Part shown: positions 9,557 through 61,684 of the stretch, piece after piece | Layout: every line of letters starts with the position of its first letter | Numbering within the stretch: the first letter of the stretch is position 1 | IMG/VR virus record: IMGVR_UViG_3300037297_000066 | Coordinates: 248,001-312,000 of that record | Length of the DNA: 64,000 bases | Direction: 5' to 3' (one strand) | The notes under the pieces: model-generated | What the model saw: only the letters and a program-made list of their open reading frames with translations | What the model was told of the DNA's origin: nothing | Databases searched by the model: none | Translations under genes and position numbers: made by a program

Positions 9557-9634
9557 GCTCTCGGACCCCGTGGAAGGGGCGACGGATTCTAACCCCGTGT
9601 CAGAGTGAGGGTTCAACTCCCTCCGAGAGCGCCA
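9557..9634 (+). tRNA. tRNA-Sup(CUA), amber anticodon
   Basis: GCTCTCG/CGAGAGC acceptor, loop TT-CTA-AC, GAGGG-TTCAACT-CCCTC, ends GCCA. Confidence 0.75.
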
Positions 9635-9635
9635 T

Positions 9636-9714
9636 GGGGACGTAGCTCAGTGGTTGAGAGCGGCGAGCTCTAAACTCGTGTCTGTCGGGGGTTCGAGTCC
9701 CTCCGTCCTCACCA
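9636..9714 (+). tRNA. tRNA-Sup(CUA), amber anticodon
   Basis: GGGGACG/CGTCCTC, D-arm GCTC-AGTGGTTGA-GAGC, GCGAG-CT-CTA-AA-CTCGT, ends ACCA. Confidence 0.85.
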
Positions 9715-34733: not shown

Positions 34734-34784
34734 AATTCAGTTCCAGTAGAGGGCCTCAGTGGAGCTGGTTGACAAATTCTTTTT

Positions 34785-34860
34785 CAGGGCGTGGTGCAAT
34801 CTGGTAGCACGCCGGCTTTGGGTGCCGGTGGTTGGAGGTTCAAATCCTCTCGCCCTGACC
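34785..34860 (+). tRNA. tRNA-Pro(TGG)
   Basis: TT-TGG-GT. Confidence 0.9.
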
Positions 34861-35042
34861 CGGTGGCATGGAGCCTCTGACCGAAAGGTCACGATGATCG
34901 GGAGATCGTGAATGGCGCAGGATCACTGCCCTTTTTCTAGAGTAGGGTAAGCCCTGACAGTCGTTCCGTGGACGTCGGTTACTGGGTTCGAGTCCCAGCA
35001 CTGTTCCAATTTCTACGCCAGTCATTCCGGCTGGTGTATTTA

Positions 35043-35091
35043 CCCCAGCAGACACACTTGGACGGTATGCCGTCCCGCCGTGTCGGGAGAG
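35043..35091 (+). promoter_or_regulatory. copy of the conserved RNA helix overlapping the RBS of the TROVE-like gene (putative autoregulatory operator)
   Basis: GACAC-ACTT-GGACGG-TATG-CCGTCC-CGCC-GTGTC directly before GGGAGAG-ATG. Confidence 0.6.
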
Positions 35092-37011
35092 ATGAAAATG
35101 GTAGACCAGGTACAGCGTGAGAACCTGGGTCCGGCAGAGCGTATCATCAACGTCCTGTTGACCTACGAGGACCACATGGTCCACAACCGGGTTGGGATCG
35201 TAGAGCCCGATCCAGACAGCCAGATCGGCCTTCGCTGGACCCAGGCAACTTGGGTCGAGAAGGACGGCAAGAAGGTTGTCTACAAGCTCCTCCCTGGGGC
35301 CCGGGGACGAAACGGAAAGACCACTCGGCGCAAGGTCGAAGTGGGCACTCTCTGGAACGACGGCACGGTTCGCAGTGCCGATCGTCGGAAGATCGGGGAG
35401 CTCCGTCAGCCTGGCCTCTTTCCCGAAGTGGCAGTCTGGATGTACCGACAGGTGGCTGAGATCTACAAGCTCGACAACGAGTTCTGTGCTCGTTGGGCCA
35501 GCTACGCTTACTCCCAGACCCACCGAGATCTGAAGGTGGTACTGGCGGCCTTCCTCCTGGTTCAGGCTCGCAAGGGTGACCCTGTGATGGACCAGGGCAA
35601 GGTAGCCTTCTTCGACGACGACTTCCGTGACGTGGGTGAGGCAATGTGCCTTCACTACGGTGGGAAGTCCGACAAGTCTGCTCTCGATGCGAAGCTTCTG
35701 CTCCGCATTCGGAAGATTCTGGAGGTCCCTGAGATCGCCCAGATCAACCGAGATCTTGGGTTCGGGAAGTCGGCTCGGAGGGCTTACCTGGGTCGTTGGC
35801 CCAGGGTCGTTCAGAAGTGGCTGAGATACCGGGAAGACAACCCGGTTCTGCTGCGGGGCTTGGTCAACAAGGGTGCTTTCCGAGCAACCGTACAGGACTT
35901 GGCTCAGCAGTCTCGGTACAGTCCGTCGAGCCCCCTCTTCTACCAGATCCTTCGGTGGCCTCAGAAGCAGGCTGACGGGGGACACCGGAAGATGGCTCTC
36001 GACCAGAAGGTGACCAAGCAGGAATCCTGGGCGGGTAAGACCGAACAGGAGATCTGCGAGATCATCACCAGTCAGAGGACTGGTTGGAAGCGTGTCACGA
36101 CTCTGGTTCCGTCAGAGATTGGGGTTACCCGAGCCATCATGGCAGCAGCTGTGGAGGCAGGGTCCCTCTCGGACAAGGACCTGATCAACCACACGCCACT
36201 TTTGGAAGAACTGGGCCTCTTGCAGGACCAGGACGTTCGGGGGCGTTGGGAGGCTGCGCTTCAGGCTGCCGAGGACCGTCGAGCTGCTAACGTGGCTCGT
36301 AACGTCAAGAGCCAGCAGACTCGTGAGCAACTCGAAGGGGCTGCTGACCAGTCTGTCCTGAAGGCTGTCGAAGAGGTGGCTACAGGGATTCGGGTCTTCT
36401 TCTGTGTGGACCGATCTTCCTCGATGGGTATCGCTATCGAGGCAGCCAAGGAGCACATCGAGAAGTTCTTGCCTGGGTTCCCGCCCGATCAGCTCTTCAT
36501 CTGTGCCTTCAACTCGTCTGCTCGGAAGGTGACTCTCAAGCAGCACTCGTCGGTTGGAGTTCGGGAAGCTTTCCGGGGCATGGTCGGCTCTGGAGGCACG
36601 GACTACGGTGCGGCTGTACGCTTCTTCTCGAAGCCCGAGTACATGCCAGCCGAGGAGGAGGTTTCGCTCTTCTTCTTCATCGGAGACGAAGCAGCGGACA
36701 CTCGTTCCTTGGTTCAGGCCGTTCGGAACTCGGATCTCAACATCGTGGCCTTCGCTCTGGTGAAGGTCGTGTCTCCCGGTTGGGACCCTGGACTCTGTGT
36801 TCAGGAAGCTGCAGCCCAGTTGGGTATCCCTGTGATCCCGATCGACGAGAAGGTGTTCTCGGACGTCTATGCGACCCCGAGGATCCTTCGTGACCTGATC
36901 GCAAATACGCCGGTAGCTCAGACCCCTGGTCACAGGGAGGTTCGGCGGGTGACCCTTCTGGACACCATTCTGGACACTGAGCTGCTCAAGAAGCCCCTGT
37001 GGGCTGCATGA
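35092..37011 (+). CDS. TROVE/Ro60-like RNA-binding protein with C-terminal vWA domain
   Basis: helical N-terminal region with TROVE-like pattern (LDAKLLLRI..YLGRWPRVVQKWL..FRATVQDLAQQSRYSP); MIDAS FCVDRSSSMG, GGTDYG and FIGDE. vWA is secure; TROVE is inferred. Confidence 0.7.
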   Translation: MKMVDQVQRENLGPAERIINVLLTYEDHMVHNRVGIVEPDPDSQIGLRWTQATWVEKDGKKVVYKLLPGARGRNGKTTRRKVEVGTLWNDGTVRSADRRKIGELRQPGLFPEVAVWMYRQVAEIYKLDNEFCARWASYAYSQTHRDLKVVLAAFLLVQARKGDPVMDQGKVAFFDDDFRDVGEAMCLHYGGKSDKSALDAKLLLRIRKILEVPEIAQINRDLGFGKSARRAYLGRWPRVVQKWLRYREDNPVLLRGLVNKGAFRATVQDLAQQSRYSPSSPLFYQILRWPQKQADGGHRKMALDQKVTKQESWAGKTEQEICEIITSQRTGWKRVTTLVPSEIGVTRAIMAAAVEAGSLSDKDLINHTPLLEELGLLQDQDVRGRWEAALQAAEDRRAANVARNVKSQQTREQLEGAADQSVLKAVEEVATGIRVFFCVDRSSSMGIAIEAAKEHIEKFLPGFPPDQLFICAFNSSARKVTLKQHSSVGVREAFRGMVGSGGTDYGAAVRFFSKPEYMPAEEEVSLFFFIGDEAADTRSLVQAVRNSDLNIVAFALVKVVSPGWDPGLCVQEAAAQLGIPVIPIDEKVFSDVYATPRILRDLIANTPVAQTPGHREVRRVTLLDTILDTELLKKPLWAA

Positions 37012-37019
37012 GGTGAAAC

Positions 37020-37958
37020 ATGGGTTGGAGAGATCTGCTTCAGACCGAGGATGAGACGTTCGTCTCCCCCTGGGTGGGAGGAAGGTCTCTCCGATCCTTC
37101 GATCGCTTCTGGCGTATCGAGGGAAAACTCCCTCAAGAGCATGGTTGGCATAGGTTCCGTCTGGCGGGCCGGAAGGCTTGTTGGACGGGGCCTGCTGATC
37201 AGTCTGGGGAGCTCAGGGATCGTCTGAGAGGCTACCTGGTAGCTGACCGACTCGTGCCAGATGAGGCTCGGGTCGAGACAGATCCAATCAAGCTGGCTCA
37301 GGGATTCGAGAGAGTTCACCTGATCGAGCCTGGTTTGGATCGGTTCGTTCGGGTAGTCGCTGGCCGGTCCTTCGAGGACGGCCCTCTCATCTACGACAGC
37401 CAGGAGTTCCCTCTTGGTCCCGAGGATGAGGTTCTTCAGGCATACTTCGACGAAGCCAAGTCTGTGGACCATGTCTCGGGGGTCGCCCCTGCTTTGGAGG
37501 CTGCGTTTCGTTTCGAATCGTGGCATCGGGAGGAGATCCGGCGGCGTCGAGAAGAGGAACGAAAGCGTCGGGAGGAAGAGGATCGGCAGCGTCAGTTGGA
37601 GGCTCGGAGACAGGAAATCATCGAGACTTTGGGGGATGCTGCTGGACGTCGGGAACTGGCTCGTTACGACTTTGCTGAGGCAGCCAGAGCTGCTTTGGCG
37701 GTAGGAGGAGCTCAGTACCTAGACTCTCGTCCCTCCTACAACAAGGGCGAGATGGTTGTTCGGTACCGGATGAACGGCCGGGGGTTGGAGTGCACTTGTG
37801 ACGCTCAGACCCTGAGGATCATCGATTCCGGCTGCTGTCTGACCAACCACGCCACTGGGGAGCAGACCGACACGAGGTTCACCCTGGAGTCACTTCCGGG
37901 GGTCATACAAGAAGCTGACCGTCGGCACATCTTGGTGGTGTATCGTCACGTAGACTGA
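37020..37958 (+). CDS. conserved hypothetical protein; C-terminal E2-like (UBC-fold) candidate
   Basis: coiled coil followed by IIDSGCCLT..FTLESLPGVIQEA, resembling the E2 GxICL..TLxxL pattern; operon context. Confidence 0.45.
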   Translation: MGWRDLLQTEDETFVSPWVGGRSLRSFDRFWRIEGKLPQEHGWHRFRLAGRKACWTGPADQSGELRDRLRGYLVADRLVPDEARVETDPIKLAQGFERVHLIEPGLDRFVRVVAGRSFEDGPLIYDSQEFPLGPEDEVLQAYFDEAKSVDHVSGVAPALEAAFRFESWHREEIRRRREEERKRREEEDRQRQLEARRQEIIETLGDAAGRRELARYDFAEAARAALAVGGAQYLDSRPSYNKGEMVVRYRMNGRGLECTCDAQTLRIIDSGCCLTNHATGEQTDTRFTLESLPGVIQEADRRHILVVYRHVD

Positions 37959-37966
37959 GAGGTACC

Positions 37967-38338
37967 ATGCAGGAATCAGGCGTTGTTTTGGATCTGAAGG
38001 AGCAGCCGATCTATTGGCACACCCCAGCGGATCGGACAACGGGGGCTATTCCTGACAGCCACACTCTGTGGGAGGTCCTCTGGGAGAATCGTGAAAACCT
38101 GTCTGGGTTTGCCCACAGTCATCCTGGCCGTGGGCTTCCCGGGCCATCCTACACGGATGTCACGACATTCTCCTCCATTGAGCGAGCTCTCGGAAAGAAG
38201 CTCAATTGGTGGATCACCAGCGAGGATCGGGTCGCCTTGGTCAGGTGGTTTGGTCCTGGGAAACACGACTACAAGGCACTTGCCGTAGAAGATGAACTGG
38301 TCTGGGTACCCAGACTGAGAGAACTTTCCTACCCTTAG
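37967..38338 (+). CDS. JAB/MPN metallo-isopeptidase
   Basis: N-terminal E and GFAHSHP..GPSYTDV (HxH-x7-S-x2-D). Confidence 0.85.
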   Translation: MQESGVVLDLKEQPIYWHTPADRTTGAIPDSHTLWEVLWENRENLSGFAHSHPGRGLPGPSYTDVTTFSSIERALGKKLNWWITSEDRVALVRWFGPGKHDYKALAVEDELVWVPRLRELSYP

Positions 38339-38366
38339 GGGTAGACACGAAGGAAGGTCAAATCAG

Positions 38367-38627
38367 ATGGCAATCGAAGAGCATGAAGCACGTGTGAACA
38401 TCACCTGGGCTCAGCAGAACGGCGATCTGCCGGACCCAGTGGCATTCGACGCAACGGATGCCAACATCCTGACCTGGGCCACCGAAGCCGTCCGTGGTGG
38501 AGATGTCCCTGGAATCGAAGCTGACCAGAACGCCGACTTCGACGGGTACGTTGTGGAGCGATTCGCCTCCAAGGAGGAAGTCCCCTACAACCGGCTCGTG
38601 GTTCGGCCGAAGGCAGAGTTTGGTTGA
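38367..38627 (+). CDS. ubiquitin-like (beta-grasp) protein candidate
   Basis: 86 aa, strand-strand-helix-strand pattern, ends LVVRPKAEFG; lies between JAB and ThiF. Confidence 0.65.
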   Translation: MAIEEHEARVNITWAQQNGDLPDPVAFDATDANILTWATEAVRGGDVPGIEADQNADFDGYVVERFASKEEVPYNRLVVRPKAEFG

Positions 38628-38669
38628 TAACCAGGTGGGTGGCCTTCGGGCCATCCGCTGTCACCCAAG

Positions 38670-39257
38670 ATGGAGATGAAGATGCAGACAGTGATGGTAG
38701 TGGGTGTGGGGGCCCTCGGATCCCACGCCATCCAATTCCTCCGAGGAGCAGCCCGGATTCGTGCCATCGACTTCGATCGGGTGGAGCAGAAGAATACCCT
38801 TTCTCAGTTTCACCCCAGGAATTCGGTGGGCAAGAACAAGGCCCAAGCCCTCCAGCAGGCGATGCAGTTCCTCTGGGGGATCAAGATCGAGGTCATTCCT
38901 CACAAGCTCGTTCAGGGCAACGCTCAGGTCGTTCTCAAGGGAGCGGACCTGGTTCTAGACTGCCTGGACAACGGGGCTTCCCGTGAGATCCTGCAGAAGG
39001 CTGTTCGGCAGGCCGGTATTCCGTGTCTTCATGGAGCTCTCTCTGCCGGGGGCATGTTCGGCCGGGTCATCTGGGACGATCTGTTCAATATCGACTACGA
39101 GTCTGGAGAAGGGATTGCCACTTGCGAGGATGGGGCTTTCCTGCCGTTCATCGGTCTGGTGAGCACCTACCTGGCTCGGAGCGCCCAAGCCTGGCTAGAA
39201 ACTGGGAAGCAGCTTAGCTTCCAGGTCTACCCTTCGGCCCCCGCCACCAGGATTTAG
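38670..39257 (+). CDS. ThiF/E1-like adenylyltransferase
   Basis: VVGVGALGS, IDFDRVEQKN, KNKAQAL and DLVLDCLDN motifs. Confidence 0.92.
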   Translation: MEMKMQTVMVVGVGALGSHAIQFLRGAARIRAIDFDRVEQKNTLSQFHPRNSVGKNKAQALQQAMQFLWGIKIEVIPHKLVQGNAQVVLKGADLVLDCLDNGASREILQKAVRQAGIPCLHGALSAGGMFGRVIWDDLFNIDYESGEGIATCEDGAFLPFIGLVSTYLARSAQAWLETGKQLSFQVYPSAPATRI

Positions 39258-39361: not shown

Positions 39362-39504
39362 GGGGCTTCACAGGGGATGTGGTTCCCCGCCTGTTTTTTG
39401 GAACAGGAGCATCAGCTCTACCCCGCCACCACACTCGGTTTCCTAGGAAACCCGCCGTAGTTGGCCTACAAGCATTACCGGTTCGACTCCGGGAAGCCCC
39501 GCCA
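39362..39504 (+). ncRNA. CCA-ended tRNA-like RNA with the conserved helix inserted in the variable region
   Basis: GGGGCTT/AAGCCCC-G-CCA; T-arm CCGG-TTCGACT-CCGG; ACTCGG-TTTCC-TA-GGAAA-CCCGCC. Confidence 0.75.
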
Positions 39505-39649: not shown

Positions 39650-39777
39650 GGACATCCCGCAGGAACGTGCCTACACGCATACAGCTCAATTGGTAGAGCA
39701 TCGGATTCCTATTCCGAGGGTTGGGGGTTCAAATCCCCCTATGTGACCTTCCTACCGCACCTCCACTCGGATGTCCT
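39649..39777 (+). ncRNA. conserved helix enclosing a tRNA-Arg(CCT) body (39676-39746)
   Basis: AGGACATCC/GGATGTCCT stem; inner TCGGA-TT-CCT-AT-TCCGA, no CCA. Confidence 0.7.
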
Positions 39778-39877
39778 AATCTCTTAATCCCAAGCCCCCA
39801 GGAGAAGATCTCCTGCGTGTGGCTAAGGGACACCTTCTAGGGGTTCATGATCAATCTACTTGTTGGGACTGTTGATC

Positions 39878-40264
39878 ATGGAATCCTACGACTATGATCG
39901 GAGCGTGGCAGCAGGAACTCTCAAGCCGTGGGGTGATAGCTTGGTTCAGTGGATGGAGTCTTTGTCCAAGCAGGTGATCGATGTGGTCGCCAAGAGCCGG
40001 AAGTTTCGTGGCCTCAAGCTAAACTCCAGATCCTACGAGGGGAGAGGCAGAGAAGACCTGATCATGGGGATGGACCCCAAGACGGGAAAGCCCGTCAGTG
40101 TGAAGTCTTACGTTTACTTCTCTCCCGAGGATGCTCAGGTACGGGCCCGAGTGGTTCATAGTAGGGACCGAGAGATGGATATTGTGGTAGACCGGACCAT
40201 CGGTTTCCGGGAGTCCTCAAATCCAGTGATCCAGGAAGTTTCAAAGTACTTCGCTGCAGCCTGA
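39878..40264 (+). CDS. hypothetical protein with YDYDR motif
   Basis: MESYDYDRSVAAG. Confidence 0.7.
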   Translation: MESYDYDRSVAAGTLKPWGDSLVQWMESLSKQVIDVVAKSRKFRGLKLNSRSYEGRGREDLIMGMDPKTGKPVSVKSYVYFSPEDAQVRARVVHSRDREMDIVVDRTIGFRESSNPVIQEVSKYFAAA

Positions 40265-40269
40265 TAGTG

Positions 40270-41067
40270 ATGGCCTACGATTACGACCGTCGAGAAGCAG
40301 CTCGTCCCATCCCCATCAACAAGGGGATGGTCCAGAACACGGCTGACAAGATCATCCGGGAGCTCCCGAAGCACATGAAGTTTCGGGATCTATCCAGCCC
40401 GTTGTACATGACCCGAGGCTGGACTCCCAAGTGGGGTTTTTACGTGGGCGTCTACGAGACGACTGATGTCCAGGGATACCCTGTCAACGTCCCGGTGGAA
40501 GTGGGTTCCAAGTCTACGGTGGTTTGGGACAGCCCCCGTAGGTGGGTGGACGGAGGAGCCGTTAAAAGCCGTTACCGAGCGGATGGGAAGGGTAAGGCCA
40601 AAGGGTACGGTTCCAAATGGGCTCTTCGGATCAACTTCAACTCGAATCGCTCTCCCCAGGACATTCTGGACAACCTTTCCGGGGTTAAGCGAGAGCTGAT
40701 CTCGGTCCTATCCCATGAGGTGACCCATCTCCGAGATCTTCTTCGGCACAAAGGGGATGCTCATGAGGATTCACCTGACGCTGTTGAGAGGTACTACAAT
40801 GAGCCTACCGAGCTCCGAGCTTTCATGCGGCAGGTGGTTGACGAGGTCCTCGCTCATGCTGACGAGGTTGGTCGGGACACCGAGGGTTTCGGACTCTACC
40901 TGAACAACAACTTCGTGGACCGAGCTCTAGAAAGTTCAGCTACTTGGGACCGGATTCGAAAGCACTTGTTTCCGAAGAATCGGAATCTACTCCTCAAGGC
41001 AGTAGTCAGGTCTTTGCAAGATGCTTGGCCTGGGCTACAACGCAAGTATCCTGTCGAGGAAATCTGA
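40270..41067 (+). CDS. YDYDR-motif protein with HExxH (putative metallopeptidase)
   Basis: MAYDYDRREAA; LSHEVTHL..YYNEPTELRAF. Confidence 0.65.
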   Translation: MAYDYDRREAARPIPINKGMVQNTADKIIRELPKHMKFRDLSSPLYMTRGWTPKWGFYVGVYETTDVQGYPVNVPVEVGSKSTVVWDSPRRWVDGGAVKSRYRADGKGKAKGYGSKWALRINFNSNRSPQDILDNLSGVKRELISVLSHEVTHLRDLLRHKGDAHEDSPDAVERYYNEPTELRAFMRQVVDEVLAHADEVGRDTEGFGLYLNNNFVDRALESSATWDRIRKHLFPKNRNLLLKAVVRSLQDAWPGLQRKYPVEEI

Positions 41068-54877: not shown

Positions 54878-55260
54878 GGGGCCGATTTGGTTTCGACAGA
54901 GGCATGGAGGTTGTAGTTGCGAGCAGAGGCGCTCGGCCCTTTCCAAAACCGAGCCGTAAATAGCTGCAAACGATAATGCAATCGCTGATCAGGCCATCGC
55001 AGCCTGAAAGCCGTCCGACCTTGAGATAGCCTTGGTAAAGGAAGGACGTCAGCACTAAGGCCACTGGACCACAAGGATTGCCTAACCACTTGTGATCGAC
55101 ATTGCAGAATGGCTTTGACGGGCGAGATTCCCGGAACCTCAGAAAGGCAGCCAGCGGCCTCCTGAGTTTTGAACATCCCCTTGGGGACTAGTTGGCTACG
55201 CTCGTGAATGAGGCTACAAGCAAAGGTTTCTGGAACCGGGTTCGAGTCCCGGCGGCTCCA
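54878..55260 (+). ncRNA. ssrA: tmRNA; tag peptide ANDNAIADQAIAA
   Basis: GGGGCCG..TTTCGAC 5' end, G3:U70 acceptor CGGCTCC-A, T-arm CCGGG-TTCGAGT-CCCGG; tag ORF 54966-55007. Confidence 0.92.
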
Positions 55261-55351
55261 CTAAGCAATTTCAAGTCCTGTCAAGGTGTCTGAGCGTCTC
55301 TGATGCTCACTTGTAGGAGTGCTATGAAAAAGCTGAAACGATAGGTGTACC

Positions 55352-59658: not shown

Positions 59659-61684
<2,026 letters not shown>

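What the first reader, a model, noticed from the sequence alone, without database searches (positions are those of the whole stretch)
35092..39257. Phage-borne five-gene ubiquitin-like operon headed by a TROVE-vWA protein
Seen: tightly spaced same-strand ORFs, namely TROVE-like-vWA (640 aa), a 312-aa protein with IIDSGCCLT..TLESL, a JAB peptidase (HSHP..PSYTD), an 86-aa protein ending in ..RPKAEFG and a ThiF/E1 with a C-terminal TCEDG Cys. Known: E1/E2/JAB/Ubl sets in bacteria drive protein conjugation in antiphage systems (CBASS Cap2/Cap3, Bil) or sulfur transfer. Inference: this is a complete E1-E2-Ubl-DUB cascade carried by a phage. The Ubl ends directly in Gly, so JAB would act as deconjugase. 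An RNA-binding vWA protein as possible substrate adaptor is not a layout I recognise from characterised systems.
Basis: partly seen in the sequence, partly recalled or inferred. Interest (0 to 1): 0.88.

Follow-up and report, generated by a model that had tools for sequence, protein, structure and literature searches.

The report
Ubiquitin-like tagging module in huge phages
Giant bacteriophages, and some soil bacteria, carry a conserved five-gene set encoding a small ubiquitin-like protein, the enzyme that activates it, the protease that trims it and two partner proteins of unknown fold.

Summary
The five tightly spaced + strand ORFs are real and form an evolutionary unit. The same five genes, in the same order, occur in 55 non-redundant huge-phage loci and as compact operons in Myxococcota and actinomycete chromosomes.

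Three parts are well supported:
- A minimal MoeB/ThiF-type E1 with an invariant Cys.
- A JAMM peptidase with an intact catalytic motif.
- An 86-aa protein predicted as a beta-grasp, with a conserved RPK(T)PFG end (Pro, Lys and Gly invariant).

In relatives the terminal Gly is followed by unconserved tails of 0-61 aa. All 11 loci that lack JAB encode a tail-less Ubl. JAB is therefore mainly the maturase, not only a deconjugase.

Two labels fail:
- The 312-aa protein shows no UBC/E2 signal by sequence models or Foldseek. It does have one superfamily-invariant Cys (DxGxCL), so a non-canonical carrier role is possible.
- The 640-aa protein has a true vWA/MIDAS domain, but TROVE homology was not detected. 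hhalign against a TROVE profile scored no better than shuffled controls.

In phages the module sits inside same-strand tRNA arrays, which is unexplained. I found no published description.

Verdict: a new variant of prokaryotic Ubl systems. Conjugation versus sulfur transfer remains undecided.

The parts
35092..37011 (+). vWA protein (639 aa; alternative GTG start at 35080). About 430 aa of N-terminal region of unknown fold, then a C-terminal vWA domain with a complete MIDAS motif (DRSSS at 36409-36423, then GGTD and GDE).
   Evidence: ORF. VWA_2 at 4e-7, found in 52/52 family members. The family profile hits generic vWA structures in PDB. D440, S442, S444, T503 and D532 are invariant. No TROVE signal.
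37020..37958 (+). p312: a 312-aa protein of unknown fold. It has a beta-rich N-terminal domain, a long charged helix, and a C-terminal helix / four-strand sheet / helix domain. That domain carries the only superfamily-invariant Cys (Cys273, codon 37836-37838, in DSGCCL) and the TLESL motif.
   Evidence: AF2 pLDDT 84. No significant Foldseek hit in PDB or BFVD. No family-model hit. Cys273 is invariant in phage and cellular branches, whereas Cys258 and Cys260 are not.
37967..38338 (+). JAMM/JAB metallopeptidase, 123 aa. Motif HSHPGRGLPGPSYTD at 38114-38158.
   Evidence: Prok-JAB 4.6e-4; the LR756511 orthologue scores 8e-8, above the cut-off. H50, H52, S61, D64 are invariant and E3 nearly invariant. 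The PDB profile's weak best hits are Rpn11.
38367..38627 (+). Ubiquitin-like (beta-grasp) protein, 86 aa, ending in RPKAEFG. The terminal Gly codon is 38622-38624, directly followed by the stop.
   Evidence: AF2 pLDDT 92 with strand-strand-helix-strand-strand topology. Top Foldseek hits are ubiquitin-superfold domains, best E 0.045. The C-terminal RPK(T)PFG motif is conserved (Pro, Lys and Gly invariant), with unconserved tails of 0-61 aa in relatives. No Pfam Ubl family hit.
38670..39257 (+). Minimal MoeB/ThiF-type E1 adenylyltransferase, 195 aa. GVGALGS at 38703-38723, DCLDN at 38958-38972, and invariant Cys152 (in TCEDG, 39120-39134).
   Evidence: ThiF 1.7e-23. The family profile finds MoeB 1JW9 at 1.3e-16. 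Cys152 aligns with MoeB Cys187. Catalytic residues are invariant in 95 sequences.
34784..34861 (+). tRNA-Pro(UGG), the last tRNA of the upstream array, about 230 nt before the module.
   Evidence: The same arrangement is seen in most related phage loci.
39373..39388 (+). Terminator-like hairpin followed by a T run, 116 nt after the E1 stop. A consensus match only.
39675..39748 (+). tRNA-Arg(CCU), the first tRNA downstream of the module. The array then continues to 54043.

Best explanation
The block is a self-contained module that activates and conjugates a ubiquitin-like protein. It is built from three recognisable parts and two family-specific parts.

Proposed mechanism:
1. The small beta-grasp protein is made with, or in this window without, a short junk tail after an invariant C-terminal Gly. 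The JAMM peptidase removes the tail (inferred from comparative data).
2. The minimal MoeB-like E1 adenylates the exposed Gly and takes it onto its invariant Cys152 (inferred from conserved residues).
3. The Ubl is passed to the single invariant Cys273 of the 312-aa protein. That protein would be a carrier with a fold other than UBC. From there the Ubl goes to target lysines (speculative).
4. The vWA/MIDAS protein serves as scaffold, substrate receptor or target (speculative).

The five genes are one evolutionary unit. It is shared by a large clade of huge phages, probably of Myxococcota, and by chromosomes of Myxococcota and some actinomycetes. What is tagged is unknown.
For: **Unit.** The five genes keep the same order and strand in 55 non-redundant viral loci, despite variable inserts, and they are the only conserved ORF families in those neighbourhoods. 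They form compact five-gene operons in Virgisporangium, Spirillospora and a 2.3-Mb contig. In Myxococcus hansupus and Archangium minus they are split into [vWA-p312-JAB] and [Ubl-E1].

**E1.** ThiF at 1.7e-23. Closest to MoeB, with Cys152 aligned to MoeB Cys187. The P-loop, Asp, Lys and Arg residues and the Cys are invariant in 94-95 of 95 sequences.

**Ubl.** pLDDT 92 with a beta-grasp topology. The Foldseek top 50 is almost entirely ubiquitin-superfold domains. The terminal Gly is invariant, with unconserved tails.

**JAB.** The JAMM residues are invariant.
- All 11 JAB-less loci have a tail-less Ubl, against 16 of 81 distinct Ubl sequences in JAB-bearing loci. Fisher p = 2e-7, but the samples are not independent.
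- JAB presence changes at least 6 times on the p312 tree.

**p312.** Exactly one Cys is invariant across the phage and cellular branches. It sits in a loop just after the fourth strand of a helix / four-strand / helix domain. This is the position a catalytic Cys occupies in E2-like folds (my reading of the topology).

**C-terminus.** The penultimate residue is Phe, not Gly. Conjugated Ubls such as Atg8 and Atg12 end this way, whereas known sulfur carriers end in GG (established knowledge, not tested here).
Against: - No E2/UBC, RWD or UEV similarity for p312 in any sequence model or in Foldseek. Its carrier role rests on one invariant Cys and on topology.
- The E1 is nearest to the sulfur-carrier E1s MoeB, ThiF and Uba4.
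- Individual Foldseek hits for the Ubl are not significant (best E 0.045).
- No target, thioester or conjugate has been observed.
- JAB was lost repeatedly, so reversibility is not essential.
- The independent-pairs test of JAB loss against tail loss is underpowered (p 0.125-0.5).
Confidence: 0.5

Rival explanations
1. Sulfur-carrier pathway. The E1 adenylates the Ubl, which is converted to a C-terminal thiocarboxylate. p312 uses its invariant Cys as a persulfide relay or as part of a sulfur-inserting enzyme. In phages the acceptor could be the phage's own tRNAs (thiolated nucleosides), which would explain the position inside tRNA arrays. JAB matures the carrier, as in CysO/Mec+ or QbsE/QbsD.
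For: - The E1 is most similar to MoeB, ThiF, Uba4 and UbaA.
- Cys152 aligns with MoeB Cys187.
- JAB-dependent removal of residues after the C-terminal Gly is the known pattern of CysO/Mec+ and QbsE/QbsD (established knowledge; pattern seen).
- The module is embedded in same-strand tRNA arrays in 47 of 55 phage loci, and also in L001 and L109.
Against: - No rhodanese, cysteine desulfurase, PP-loop ATPase, ThiG, MoaE or CysM-type partner is among the conserved neighbours. Only the five genes are conserved.
- The Ubl ends in FG, not GG.
- Cellular copies have no tRNA context.
- A large vWA/MIDAS protein has no known place in sulfur transfer.
Confidence: 0.2
2. E2-independent conjugation, as in archaeal sampylation (SAMP/UbaA/HvJAMM1) or Thermus TtuB/TtuC. 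The E1 alone transfers the Ubl to targets. p312 and the vWA protein are the main targets, or regulators or receptors that read the tag, and are not catalytic carriers.
For: - The E1 is minimal and MoeB/UbaA-like. NCBIfam gives a sub-threshold match to the SAMP-activating E1 at 2.8e-15, and a faint desampylase match for JAB.
- No recognisable E2 is present.
- In Myxococcus and Archangium, Ubl-E1 forms a separate block from vWA-p312-JAB.
Against: A single Cys is invariant in p312 across very divergent branches (28-37% identity, 22% for the LR756511 copy), while neighbouring Cys residues are lost. That is hard to explain for a mere target.
Confidence: 0.15
3. Conflict system. The cellular operon is an antiphage defence of the Bil/CBASS/Bub kind, tagging phage proteins. 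The phage copy is a captured version used for counter-defence or for superinfection exclusion.
For: - All characterised bacterial E1/Ubl/JAB conjugation systems act in antiphage immunity (PMC11601596, PMC10097602).
- A vWA-linked Ubl system has been predicted in conflict systems of multicellular bacteria (PMC7159879).
- The hosts are Myxococcota and actinomycetes, as in that paper.
Against: - PADLOC recognises only the E1 domain.
- The phage copies behave like a core, vertically kept block: 50-60% identity, fixed order and fixed position.
- The cellular flanks seen are ordinary genes, not defence islands. Few loci were inspected.
Confidence: 0.1
4. Virion-assembly chaperone pair, like the lambda tail proteins I (Ubl) and K (JAB + NlpC), with no covalent chemistry by the E1.
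For: - The JAB gives weak PHROG hits to tail proteins (phrog_5556, 1.3e-3).
- A Ubl + JAB pair in tail gene clusters was described earlier (PMC1779556).
Against: - The module is present in bacterial chromosomes without phage genes.
- It sits among tRNAs, not among structural genes.
- The E1 has an invariant active site.
Confidence: 0.03

Closest known systems
Archaeal sampylation (SAMP1-3 / UbaA / HvJAMM1) and Thermus TtuB / TtuC with a JAMM protease
   Same: A small beta-grasp protein with a C-terminal Gly, a single-domain MoeB-like E1 with a conserved Cys, a JAMM peptidase, and no canonical E2 or E3.
   Different: - The Ubl ends in FG, not GG, and belongs to no known Ubl sequence family.
- Two extra obligatory partners are present: the vWA protein and p312 with its invariant Cys.
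- The E1 lacks the N-terminal helix and the zinc CxxC motifs.
- The carriers are phages, Myxococcota and actinomycetes.
CysO / Mec+ (Rv1334-1336) and QbsC / QbsD / QbsE sulfur-carrier systems
   Same: A JAB peptidase removes residues that follow the C-terminal Gly of a small carrier, which a MoeB-like E1 activates. The tail/JAB co-variation seen here fits this.
   Different: No rhodanese domain and no sulfur-accepting synthase is linked. The end is FG. The vWA protein and p312 have no counterpart.
Bil (BilABCD) antiphage system
   Same: Separate genes for a Ubl, a JAB peptidase, an E1 and a Cys-dependent carrier. No E3.
   Different: - BilD is a large IAD-AAD-CYS E1 and BilB is a UBC-fold E2 (PMC11601596).
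- Here the E1 is a 195-aa single domain, and the candidate carrier shows no UBC signal.
- No PADLOC match except the E1 domain.
- A vWA protein is added.
Bub (6E/DUF6527) operons and CBASS Cap2/Cap3
   Same: Prokaryotic E1 / JAB / Ubl-type chemistry. In Type I Bub, the JAB cleaves a precursor to release the Ubl.
   Different: - Bub uses oxyester (Ser) intermediates, its E1 lacks the catalytic Cys, and it carries a DUF6527 serine protease.
- Cap2 is an E1-E2 fusion that conjugates the cGAS-like enzyme.
- Here both candidate Cys residues are invariant, and there is no DUF6527 and no fusion.
FtsH ternary system (vWA-MoxR subsystem 3) of Kaur, Burroughs, Iyer and Aravind 2020
   Same: The only described prokaryotic system I found that couples a vWA protein to a JAB + E1 + Ubl set. 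It also occurs in bacteria with complex life styles (PMC7159879).
   Different: That system also has MoxR, FtsH, a RING E3, a Ubl-E2 fusion, EAD1 adaptors and a caspase-like effector. Its vWA protein carries a beta-propeller. None of these is present here.
Ro60/Rsr (TROVE + vWA) RNA-binding proteins, e.g. mycobacteriophage Bxz1 gp220
   Same: An N-terminal region of about 400 aa followed by a C-terminal MIDAS vWA domain. In phages it is encoded near tRNA genes.
   Different: - No TROVE hit (PF05731) and no recurrent Ro60-type vWA hit (PF25045) in 52 members, whereas gp220 hits both at about 1e-50.
- hhalign of the N-terminal regions scores 17.2. Controls score 18.5 (reversed) and 16.6 on average (shuffled).
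Eukaryotic BRISC / BRCA1-A core: MERIT40 (vWA), BRE (UEV), BRCC36 (JAMM)
   Same: An analogy from my own knowledge only: a vWA protein, an E2-like non-canonical protein and a JAMM peptidase act as one complex. This mirrors the [vWA-p312-JAB] sub-block of the myxobacterial loci.
   Different: No homology was shown. p312 is not detectably UEV/UBC. The eukaryotic complex only removes ubiquitin.

Membership tests
Prokaryotic Ubl + E1 + JAB triads (Iyer, Burroughs and Aravind 2006) | ThiF/MoeB-type adenylation domain with an intact nucleotide-binding site | tested here: met
   Pfam ThiF at 1.7e-23. MoeB 1JW9 at 1.3e-16. GxGxxG, D34, K57, D97/D100 and R105 are conserved in 94-95 of 95 sequences.
Prokaryotic Ubl + E1 + JAB triads (Iyer, Burroughs and Aravind 2006) | Small beta-grasp protein | tested here: met
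   AF2 pLDDT 92, pTM 0.79, with strand-strand-helix-strand-strand topology. The Foldseek top 50 is dominated by Ubl, RBD, RA, PB1 and SUMO domains, but the best E is 0.045. No sequence-family hit.
Prokaryotic Ubl + E1 + JAB triads (Iyer, Burroughs and Aravind 2006) | Conserved C-terminal Gly, at the very end or followed by a removable tail | tested here: met
   RPK(T)PFG is conserved (Pro, Lys and Gly invariant). Tails of 0-61 aa are unconserved.
Prokaryotic Ubl + E1 + JAB triads (Iyer, Burroughs and Aravind 2006) | JAMM motif E...HxHx(7-8)SxxD | tested here: met
   H50, H52, S61 and D64 are invariant and E3 is nearly invariant. Cellular copies have the canonical x7 spacing.
Canonical E1-E2-Ubl cascades (Bil, CBASS Cap2/Cap3, eukaryotic-like) | A UBC-fold E2 with a catalytic Cys | tested here: not met
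   No UQ_con, Prok-E2, RWD or UEV hit in 65 members at E up to 10. None in PADLOC or NCBIfam. The PDB profile gives noise only. Foldseek against PDB and BFVD gives no E2 among the listed top 50 and no hit at E <= 0.001. One invariant Cys does exist. The search used the whole model, not the cropped domain.
Canonical E1-E2-Ubl cascades (Bil, CBASS Cap2/Cap3, eukaryotic-like) | E1 architecture: IAD-AAD-CYS (Bil) or E1-E2 fusion (Cap2) | tested here: not met
   A 195-aa single adenylation domain. PADLOC E1-E2 models match only over their E1 part.
Bub (6E/DUF6527) | DUF6527 serine protease, E1 without catalytic Cys, Ubl-E2 or E2-E1 fusions | tested here: not met
   No DUF6527 hit in the five proteins. 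The E1 Cys is invariant. The genes are separate. Definition taken from PMC11601596.
Ro60/Rsr TROVE-vWA proteins | TROVE domain (PF05731) | tested here: not met
   0 of 52 members hit. The family profile finds no Ro60 or Rsr chain in PDB. hhalign of the N-terminal region against the TROVE profile gives score 17.2, P 0.28, no better than the reversed control (18.5) or the shuffled controls (mean 16.6, max 24).
Ro60/Rsr TROVE-vWA proteins | vWA domain with MIDAS | tested here: met
   VWA_2 in 52/52 members. DxSxS, T and D are invariant. PF25045 (vWA_Ro60) is not among the recurrent hits.
Sulfur-carrier systems (ThiS/ThiF, MoaD/MoeB, CysO, QbsE, TtuB) | C-terminal Gly-Gly on the carrier | tested here: not met
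   The penultimate residue is Phe in nearly all sequences, with one Tyr and one Leu.
Sulfur-carrier systems (ThiS/ThiF, MoaD/MoeB, CysO, QbsE, TtuB) | Linked sulfur donor (rhodanese, desulfurase) or acceptor enzyme | tested here: not met
   Only the five genes are conserved within +/-8 kb in phages. The Pfam calls for neighbours in eight annotated loci show none. Unlinked genes cannot be excluded.
Sulfur-carrier systems (ThiS/ThiF, MoaD/MoeB, CysO, QbsE, TtuB) | Formation of a thiocarboxylate | not testable with these tools
   Needs biochemistry or mass spectrometry.
Protein-conjugating Ubl systems in general | Thioester intermediates and isopeptide-linked conjugates | not testable with these tools
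   Only the conserved Cys residues (E1 C152, p312 C273) and the terminal Gly can be shown.

The most novel reading that the evidence does not exclude
This is a further, undescribed type of prokaryotic ubiquitin-like conjugation pathway. Its Ubl carrier, p312, has a fold unrelated to UBC. Its substrate receptor is a MIDAS vWA protein with a new 430-aa domain.

The pathway is a core function of a large clade of huge phages. Because it is the only conserved coding block inside their tRNA arrays, it may tag components of the translation apparatus during takeover.

Cultured myxobacteria carry the ancestral or sister version, which makes the pathway genetically testable.
Probability: 0.25. Interest if true: 0.88.

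Novelty: new variant of a known kind. Interest (0 to 1): 0.72.

Why it matters
All bacterial ubiquitin-like conjugation systems characterised so far (CBASS Cap2/3, Bil, Bub) belong to the host and act against phages.

Here a Ubl / E1 / JAMM set is a conserved, apparently core, block of huge phage genomes. It comes with two obligatory partners that match nothing known.

If it conjugates proteins, three things would follow:
- It would show phages running their own tagging system.
- It would add a carrier enzyme with a fold other than UBC to the history of ubiquitin-like chemistry.
- It would give a function to a gene set with more than a thousand unannotated homologues.

If it turns out to be a sulfur carrier for tRNA thiolation, it would be a new phage-encoded tRNA-modification route.

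Either way the system is tractable. Compact copies exist in cultured Myxococcus, Archangium, Cystobacter, Virgisporangium and Spirillospora.

Tried and rejected
**TROVE label**
- Pfam on the window protein and on 52 relatives gave nothing. Neither did the PDB profile.
- Weak PHROG hits, including phrog_850 'RNA-binding protein', cover only the MIDAS start of the vWA domain.
- I fetched Bxz1 gp220 as a bona fide TROVE-vWA protein and built a 34-sequence profile from its relatives.
- Full-length hhalign gave Prob 14%, E 0.002, but that score depends on the vWA junction.
- With the vWA domain removed, the score equals the reversed and shuffled controls.
- Rejected as unsupported.

**E2 label for p312**
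- No model hit, no PDB profile hit and no Foldseek hit.
- A metal-site reading of the CxC...C motif is rejected, because only Cys273 is conserved in the cellular branch.
- Recurrent very weak matches of p312 residues ~200-280 to the B subunit of a heat-labile enterotoxin family (E 0.01-2) are treated as noise and were not pursued.

**Other leads**
- A defence-system assignment by PADLOC fails. Only the E1 domain matches.
- An apparent vWA-p312 fusion in L103 looks like a frameshifted assembly: an Arg/Pro-rich linker, with the vWA domain missing.
- In the diverged copy of phage LR756511 I could not find the Ubl gene.
- Rfam at gathering thresholds found only tRNAs and the tmRNA, and no Y RNA.
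- The independent-pairs test for JAB loss against tail loss lacked power.
- Five literature searches found no description of this module. The library is incomplete.

Full report
**1.

- 35092-37011: 639 aa, or 643 aa from GTG at 35080.
- 37020-37958: 312 aa.
- 37967-38338: 123 aa.
- 38367-38627: 86 aa.
- 38670-39257: 195 aa.

They are separated by 8, 8, 28 and 42 nt. No promoter-like or terminator-like site lies inside the block, and a terminator-like hairpin follows at 39373-39388. The quoted motifs sit at the expected codons.

The window is part of a 437-kb IMG/VR contig. It holds 52 tRNA genes and a tmRNA. The block lies between tRNA-Pro (34784-34861) and tRNA-Arg (39675-39748).

**2. The five genes are one evolutionary unit**

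The 312-aa protein (p312) has 1086 homologues at E <= 0.001 in the 90%-clustered collection. All are about 300-330 aa, none has a Pfam domain, and they sit on contigs up to 659 kb. There are 487 clusters at 50% identity.

A profile scan of IMG/VR returned 59 loci. In the 55 non-redundant ones the order vWA protein, p312, JAB, Ubl, E1 is kept on one strand. Variable insertions occur between the genes, such as small ORFs and LAGLIDADG endonucleases. All-against-all clustering of the ORFs in those loci shows that these five families, plus their antisense shadow ORFs, are the only ones conserved across the neighbourhoods.

The only annotated relative is Virus Rctr197k, where the five genes are spread over 9.4 kb in the same order. 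A more diverged copy (vWA, the C-terminal domain of p312, JAB, E1) is in the 595-kb phage LR756511.

**3. The module is not phage-specific**

A scan of one genome per species found 42 loci.
- Most are tRNA-rich contigs binned with Myxococcota MAGs, which are likely phage contigs and hint at the host.
- A divergent branch (27-34% identity for p312) lies in isolate genomes of Virgisporangium ochraceum and Spirillospora, and in Mb-sized Myxococcota contigs.

A search seeded with that branch found homologues in finished genomes of Archangium, Myxococcus hansupus, Cystobacter fuscus and Pyxidicoccus. All are annotated as hypothetical.

There the module takes one of two forms, with ordinary and non-conserved flanking genes and no tRNA arrays:
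- A compact five-gene operon.
- Two blocks, [vWA-p312-JAB] and [Ubl-E1], 5.5-9.5 kb apart.

**4. What each part is**

*E1*
- Pfam ThiF at 1.7e-23. It is closest to MoeB, then Uba4, ThiF, TcdA, the SUMO E1, Uba5 and Cap2.
- The glycine loop, D34, K57, D97/D100, R105 and Cys152 are invariant in 94-95 of 95 sequences, cellular copies included.
- Cys152 aligns with MoeB Cys187.
- The protein starts at the Rossmann strand. It lacks the zinc CxxC motifs of MoeB.

*JAB*
- The Pfam match is weak (4.6e-4). However, H50, H52, S61 and D64 are invariant and E3 is nearly invariant.
- The LR756511 and cellular orthologues pass the Pfam threshold.

*Ubl*
- No sequence family matches.
- AlphaFold2 with 48 sequences gives pLDDT 92 and a strand-strand-helix-strand-strand fold with a free C-terminal tail.
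- The 50 best Foldseek hits are almost all ubiquitin-superfold domains: Ubl domains of ubiquilins, SUMO, and PI3K/RalGDS Ras-binding, PB1 and FERM F1 domains. No single hit is significant (best E 0.045).

*vWA protein*
- VWA_2 occurs in 52/52 members, with an invariant MIDAS motif.
- The 430-aa N-terminal region matches nothing.

*p312*
- AlphaFold2 gives pLDDT 84. The model has a beta-rich N-terminal domain (12-128), a long charged helix (157-205), then helices, a four-strand meander (232-269), a loop and a helix (292-301).
- Foldseek finds nothing significant in PDB or BFVD, and no E2.

**5. Comparative evidence for the chemistry**

The Ubl family ends in a conserved RPK(T)PFG motif (Pro, Lys and Gly invariant). 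What follows the Gly is unconserved and 0-61 aa long. This is the signature of a precursor whose Gly must be exposed.
- Eleven loci have no JAB gene between p312 and the Ubl, or anywhere within 8 kb. In all eleven the Ubl ORF stops right after the Gly.
- Among JAB-bearing loci, only 16 of 81 distinct Ubl sequences stop right after the Gly. Fisher p = 2e-7, but the samples are not independent.
- On a p312 tree, JAB presence changes at least 6 times. The independent-pairs test goes in the predicted direction every time the tail differs, but it has too few pairs to be significant (p 0.125-0.5).

I conclude that JAB is first of all the maturase, and that deconjugation, if it happens, is dispensable. 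That inference rested on the window's own Ubl, which happens to be tail-less.

For p312, an alignment across the phage and cellular branches leaves one invariant Cys, Cys273 in DxGxCL. The nearby CxC of the phage proteins is absent from the cellular ones. A metal site is therefore unlikely, and a nucleophile is plausible. Cys273 lies in the loop after the fourth strand of a helix / four-strand / helix domain, which is where E2-like folds carry their Cys. This is my reading of the secondary structure, not a detected homology.

**6. The two labels that fail**

*'E2'.* No UQ_con, Prok-E2, RWD or UEV hit in 65 members, even at E up to 10. None in PADLOC or NCBIfam, none in the PDB profile search and none in Foldseek.

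*'TROVE'.*
- No PF05731 hit in 52 members, and no Ro60 or Rsr chain found by the family profile.
- As a positive control I took Bxz1 gp220, which hits TROVE and vWA_Ro60 at about 1e-50, and built a 34-sequence profile from its relatives.
- Full-length hhalign gave Prob 14%, E 0.002, across the last helices and the MIDAS strand.
- With the vWA domain removed, the score fell to 17.2 (P 0.28). The reversed control scored 18.5 and the block-shuffled controls averaged 16.6.
- A fold-level resemblance is not excluded, but nothing supports it.

**7. Mechanism**

*Best explanation (confidence about 0.5).*
- JAB trims the pro-Ubl.
- The MoeB-like E1 adenylates Gly86 and forms a thioester on Cys152.
- The Ubl moves to Cys273 of p312, a carrier with a fold other than UBC, and from there to targets.
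- The vWA/MIDAS protein acts as scaffold, receptor or target.

What is shown: conservation of the parts, the catalytic residues, the Gly/tail pattern and the linkage. What is inferred: every chemical step and the roles of p312 and the vWA protein.

*Rivals.*
- A sulfur-carrier pathway (0.2). For it: the MoeB-like E1, the CysO/QbsE-like maturation and the tRNA context in phages. Against it: the FG end, no sulfur donor or acceptor enzyme among the conserved neighbours, and no tRNA context in cells.
- E2-independent conjugation like sampylation, with p312 and the vWA protein as targets or readers (0.15).
- A defence or counter-defence role (0.1). This is a statement about biology rather than chemistry.
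- A lambda I/K-like assembly chaperone (0.03).

**8. Comparison with known systems, and novelty**

The Ubl / E1 / JAB triad belongs to the class described by Iyer et al. 2006 (PMC1779556). In architecture it is closest to SAMP/UbaA/HvJAMM1 and to CysO/Mec+ or QbsCDE.

It fails the defining features of Bil, CBASS Cap2/3 and Bub.

The only published vWA-linked Ubl system I found, the FtsH ternary system (PMC7159879), has a different parts list.

Five full-text searches found no description of this module. The library lacks many subscription papers, so prior description cannot be excluded.

I rate it a new variant of a known kind. The unexplained points are the placement inside phage tRNA arrays (47 of 55 loci have tRNAs within 8 kb, and 30 have five or more) and the two orphan folds.

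Noticed in passing
window 9557-9634 and 9636-9714: Two tandem tRNAs with anticodon CUA (amber suppressors; ARAGORN labels them tRNA-Pyl). This hints at TAG read-through or recoding in part of this phage's genes. The JAB and E1 genes of the module end in TAG, but their ends align with those of relatives.
   Followed up: partly
window 30193-54043 and 54878-55261: Fifty further tRNA genes, all on the + strand, covering nearly all amino acids. Then a tmRNA with tag peptide ANDNAIADQAIAA. Related phage loci also carry tmRNAs (L027, L048, L052).
   Followed up: partly
window 59963-61684: An ORF of 573 aa, 49% identical to the GroL/Cpn60 chaperonin.
   Followed up: partly
window 39860-40264 and 40267-41067: Two adjacent ORFs just downstream of the module share an N-terminal YDYDR motif. 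The second contains HEVTH, a possible HExxH metalloprotease motif.
   Followed up: no
L044 7121-7420, L045 10185-10538, L051 12328-12627, L055 11494-11850: Some Ubl precursors carry 14-33-aa tails with a single CxxC after the terminal Gly. Others (L001, L043, L048, L052, L061) carry 45-61-aa tails that may be fused small proteins.
   Followed up: partly
L004 11674-13671: Two LAGLIDADG homing-endonuclease genes are inserted between the Ubl and E1 genes. The module tolerates insertions but keeps its gene order.
   Followed up: no
L110 8201-17704 and L111 8218-20921: In Myxococcus hansupus and Archangium minus the module is split into [vWA-p312-JAB] and [Ubl-E1], with unrelated chromosomal genes between them. 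This suggests two functional sub-complexes.
   Followed up: partly
L095 3275-6085 and L113 2198-4864: In both Virgisporangium genomes a long Hsp70-like protein (888-936 aa) and a PCMT-type methyltransferase lie directly upstream of the vWA gene. This may be genus-level synteny only.
   Followed up: no
L112 40245-41903: The Ro-like TROVE-vWA gene of mycobacteriophage Bxz1 (gp220) also lies about 3 kb from tRNA genes. This is a parallel in placement, without detectable homology of the N-terminal regions.
   Followed up: partly
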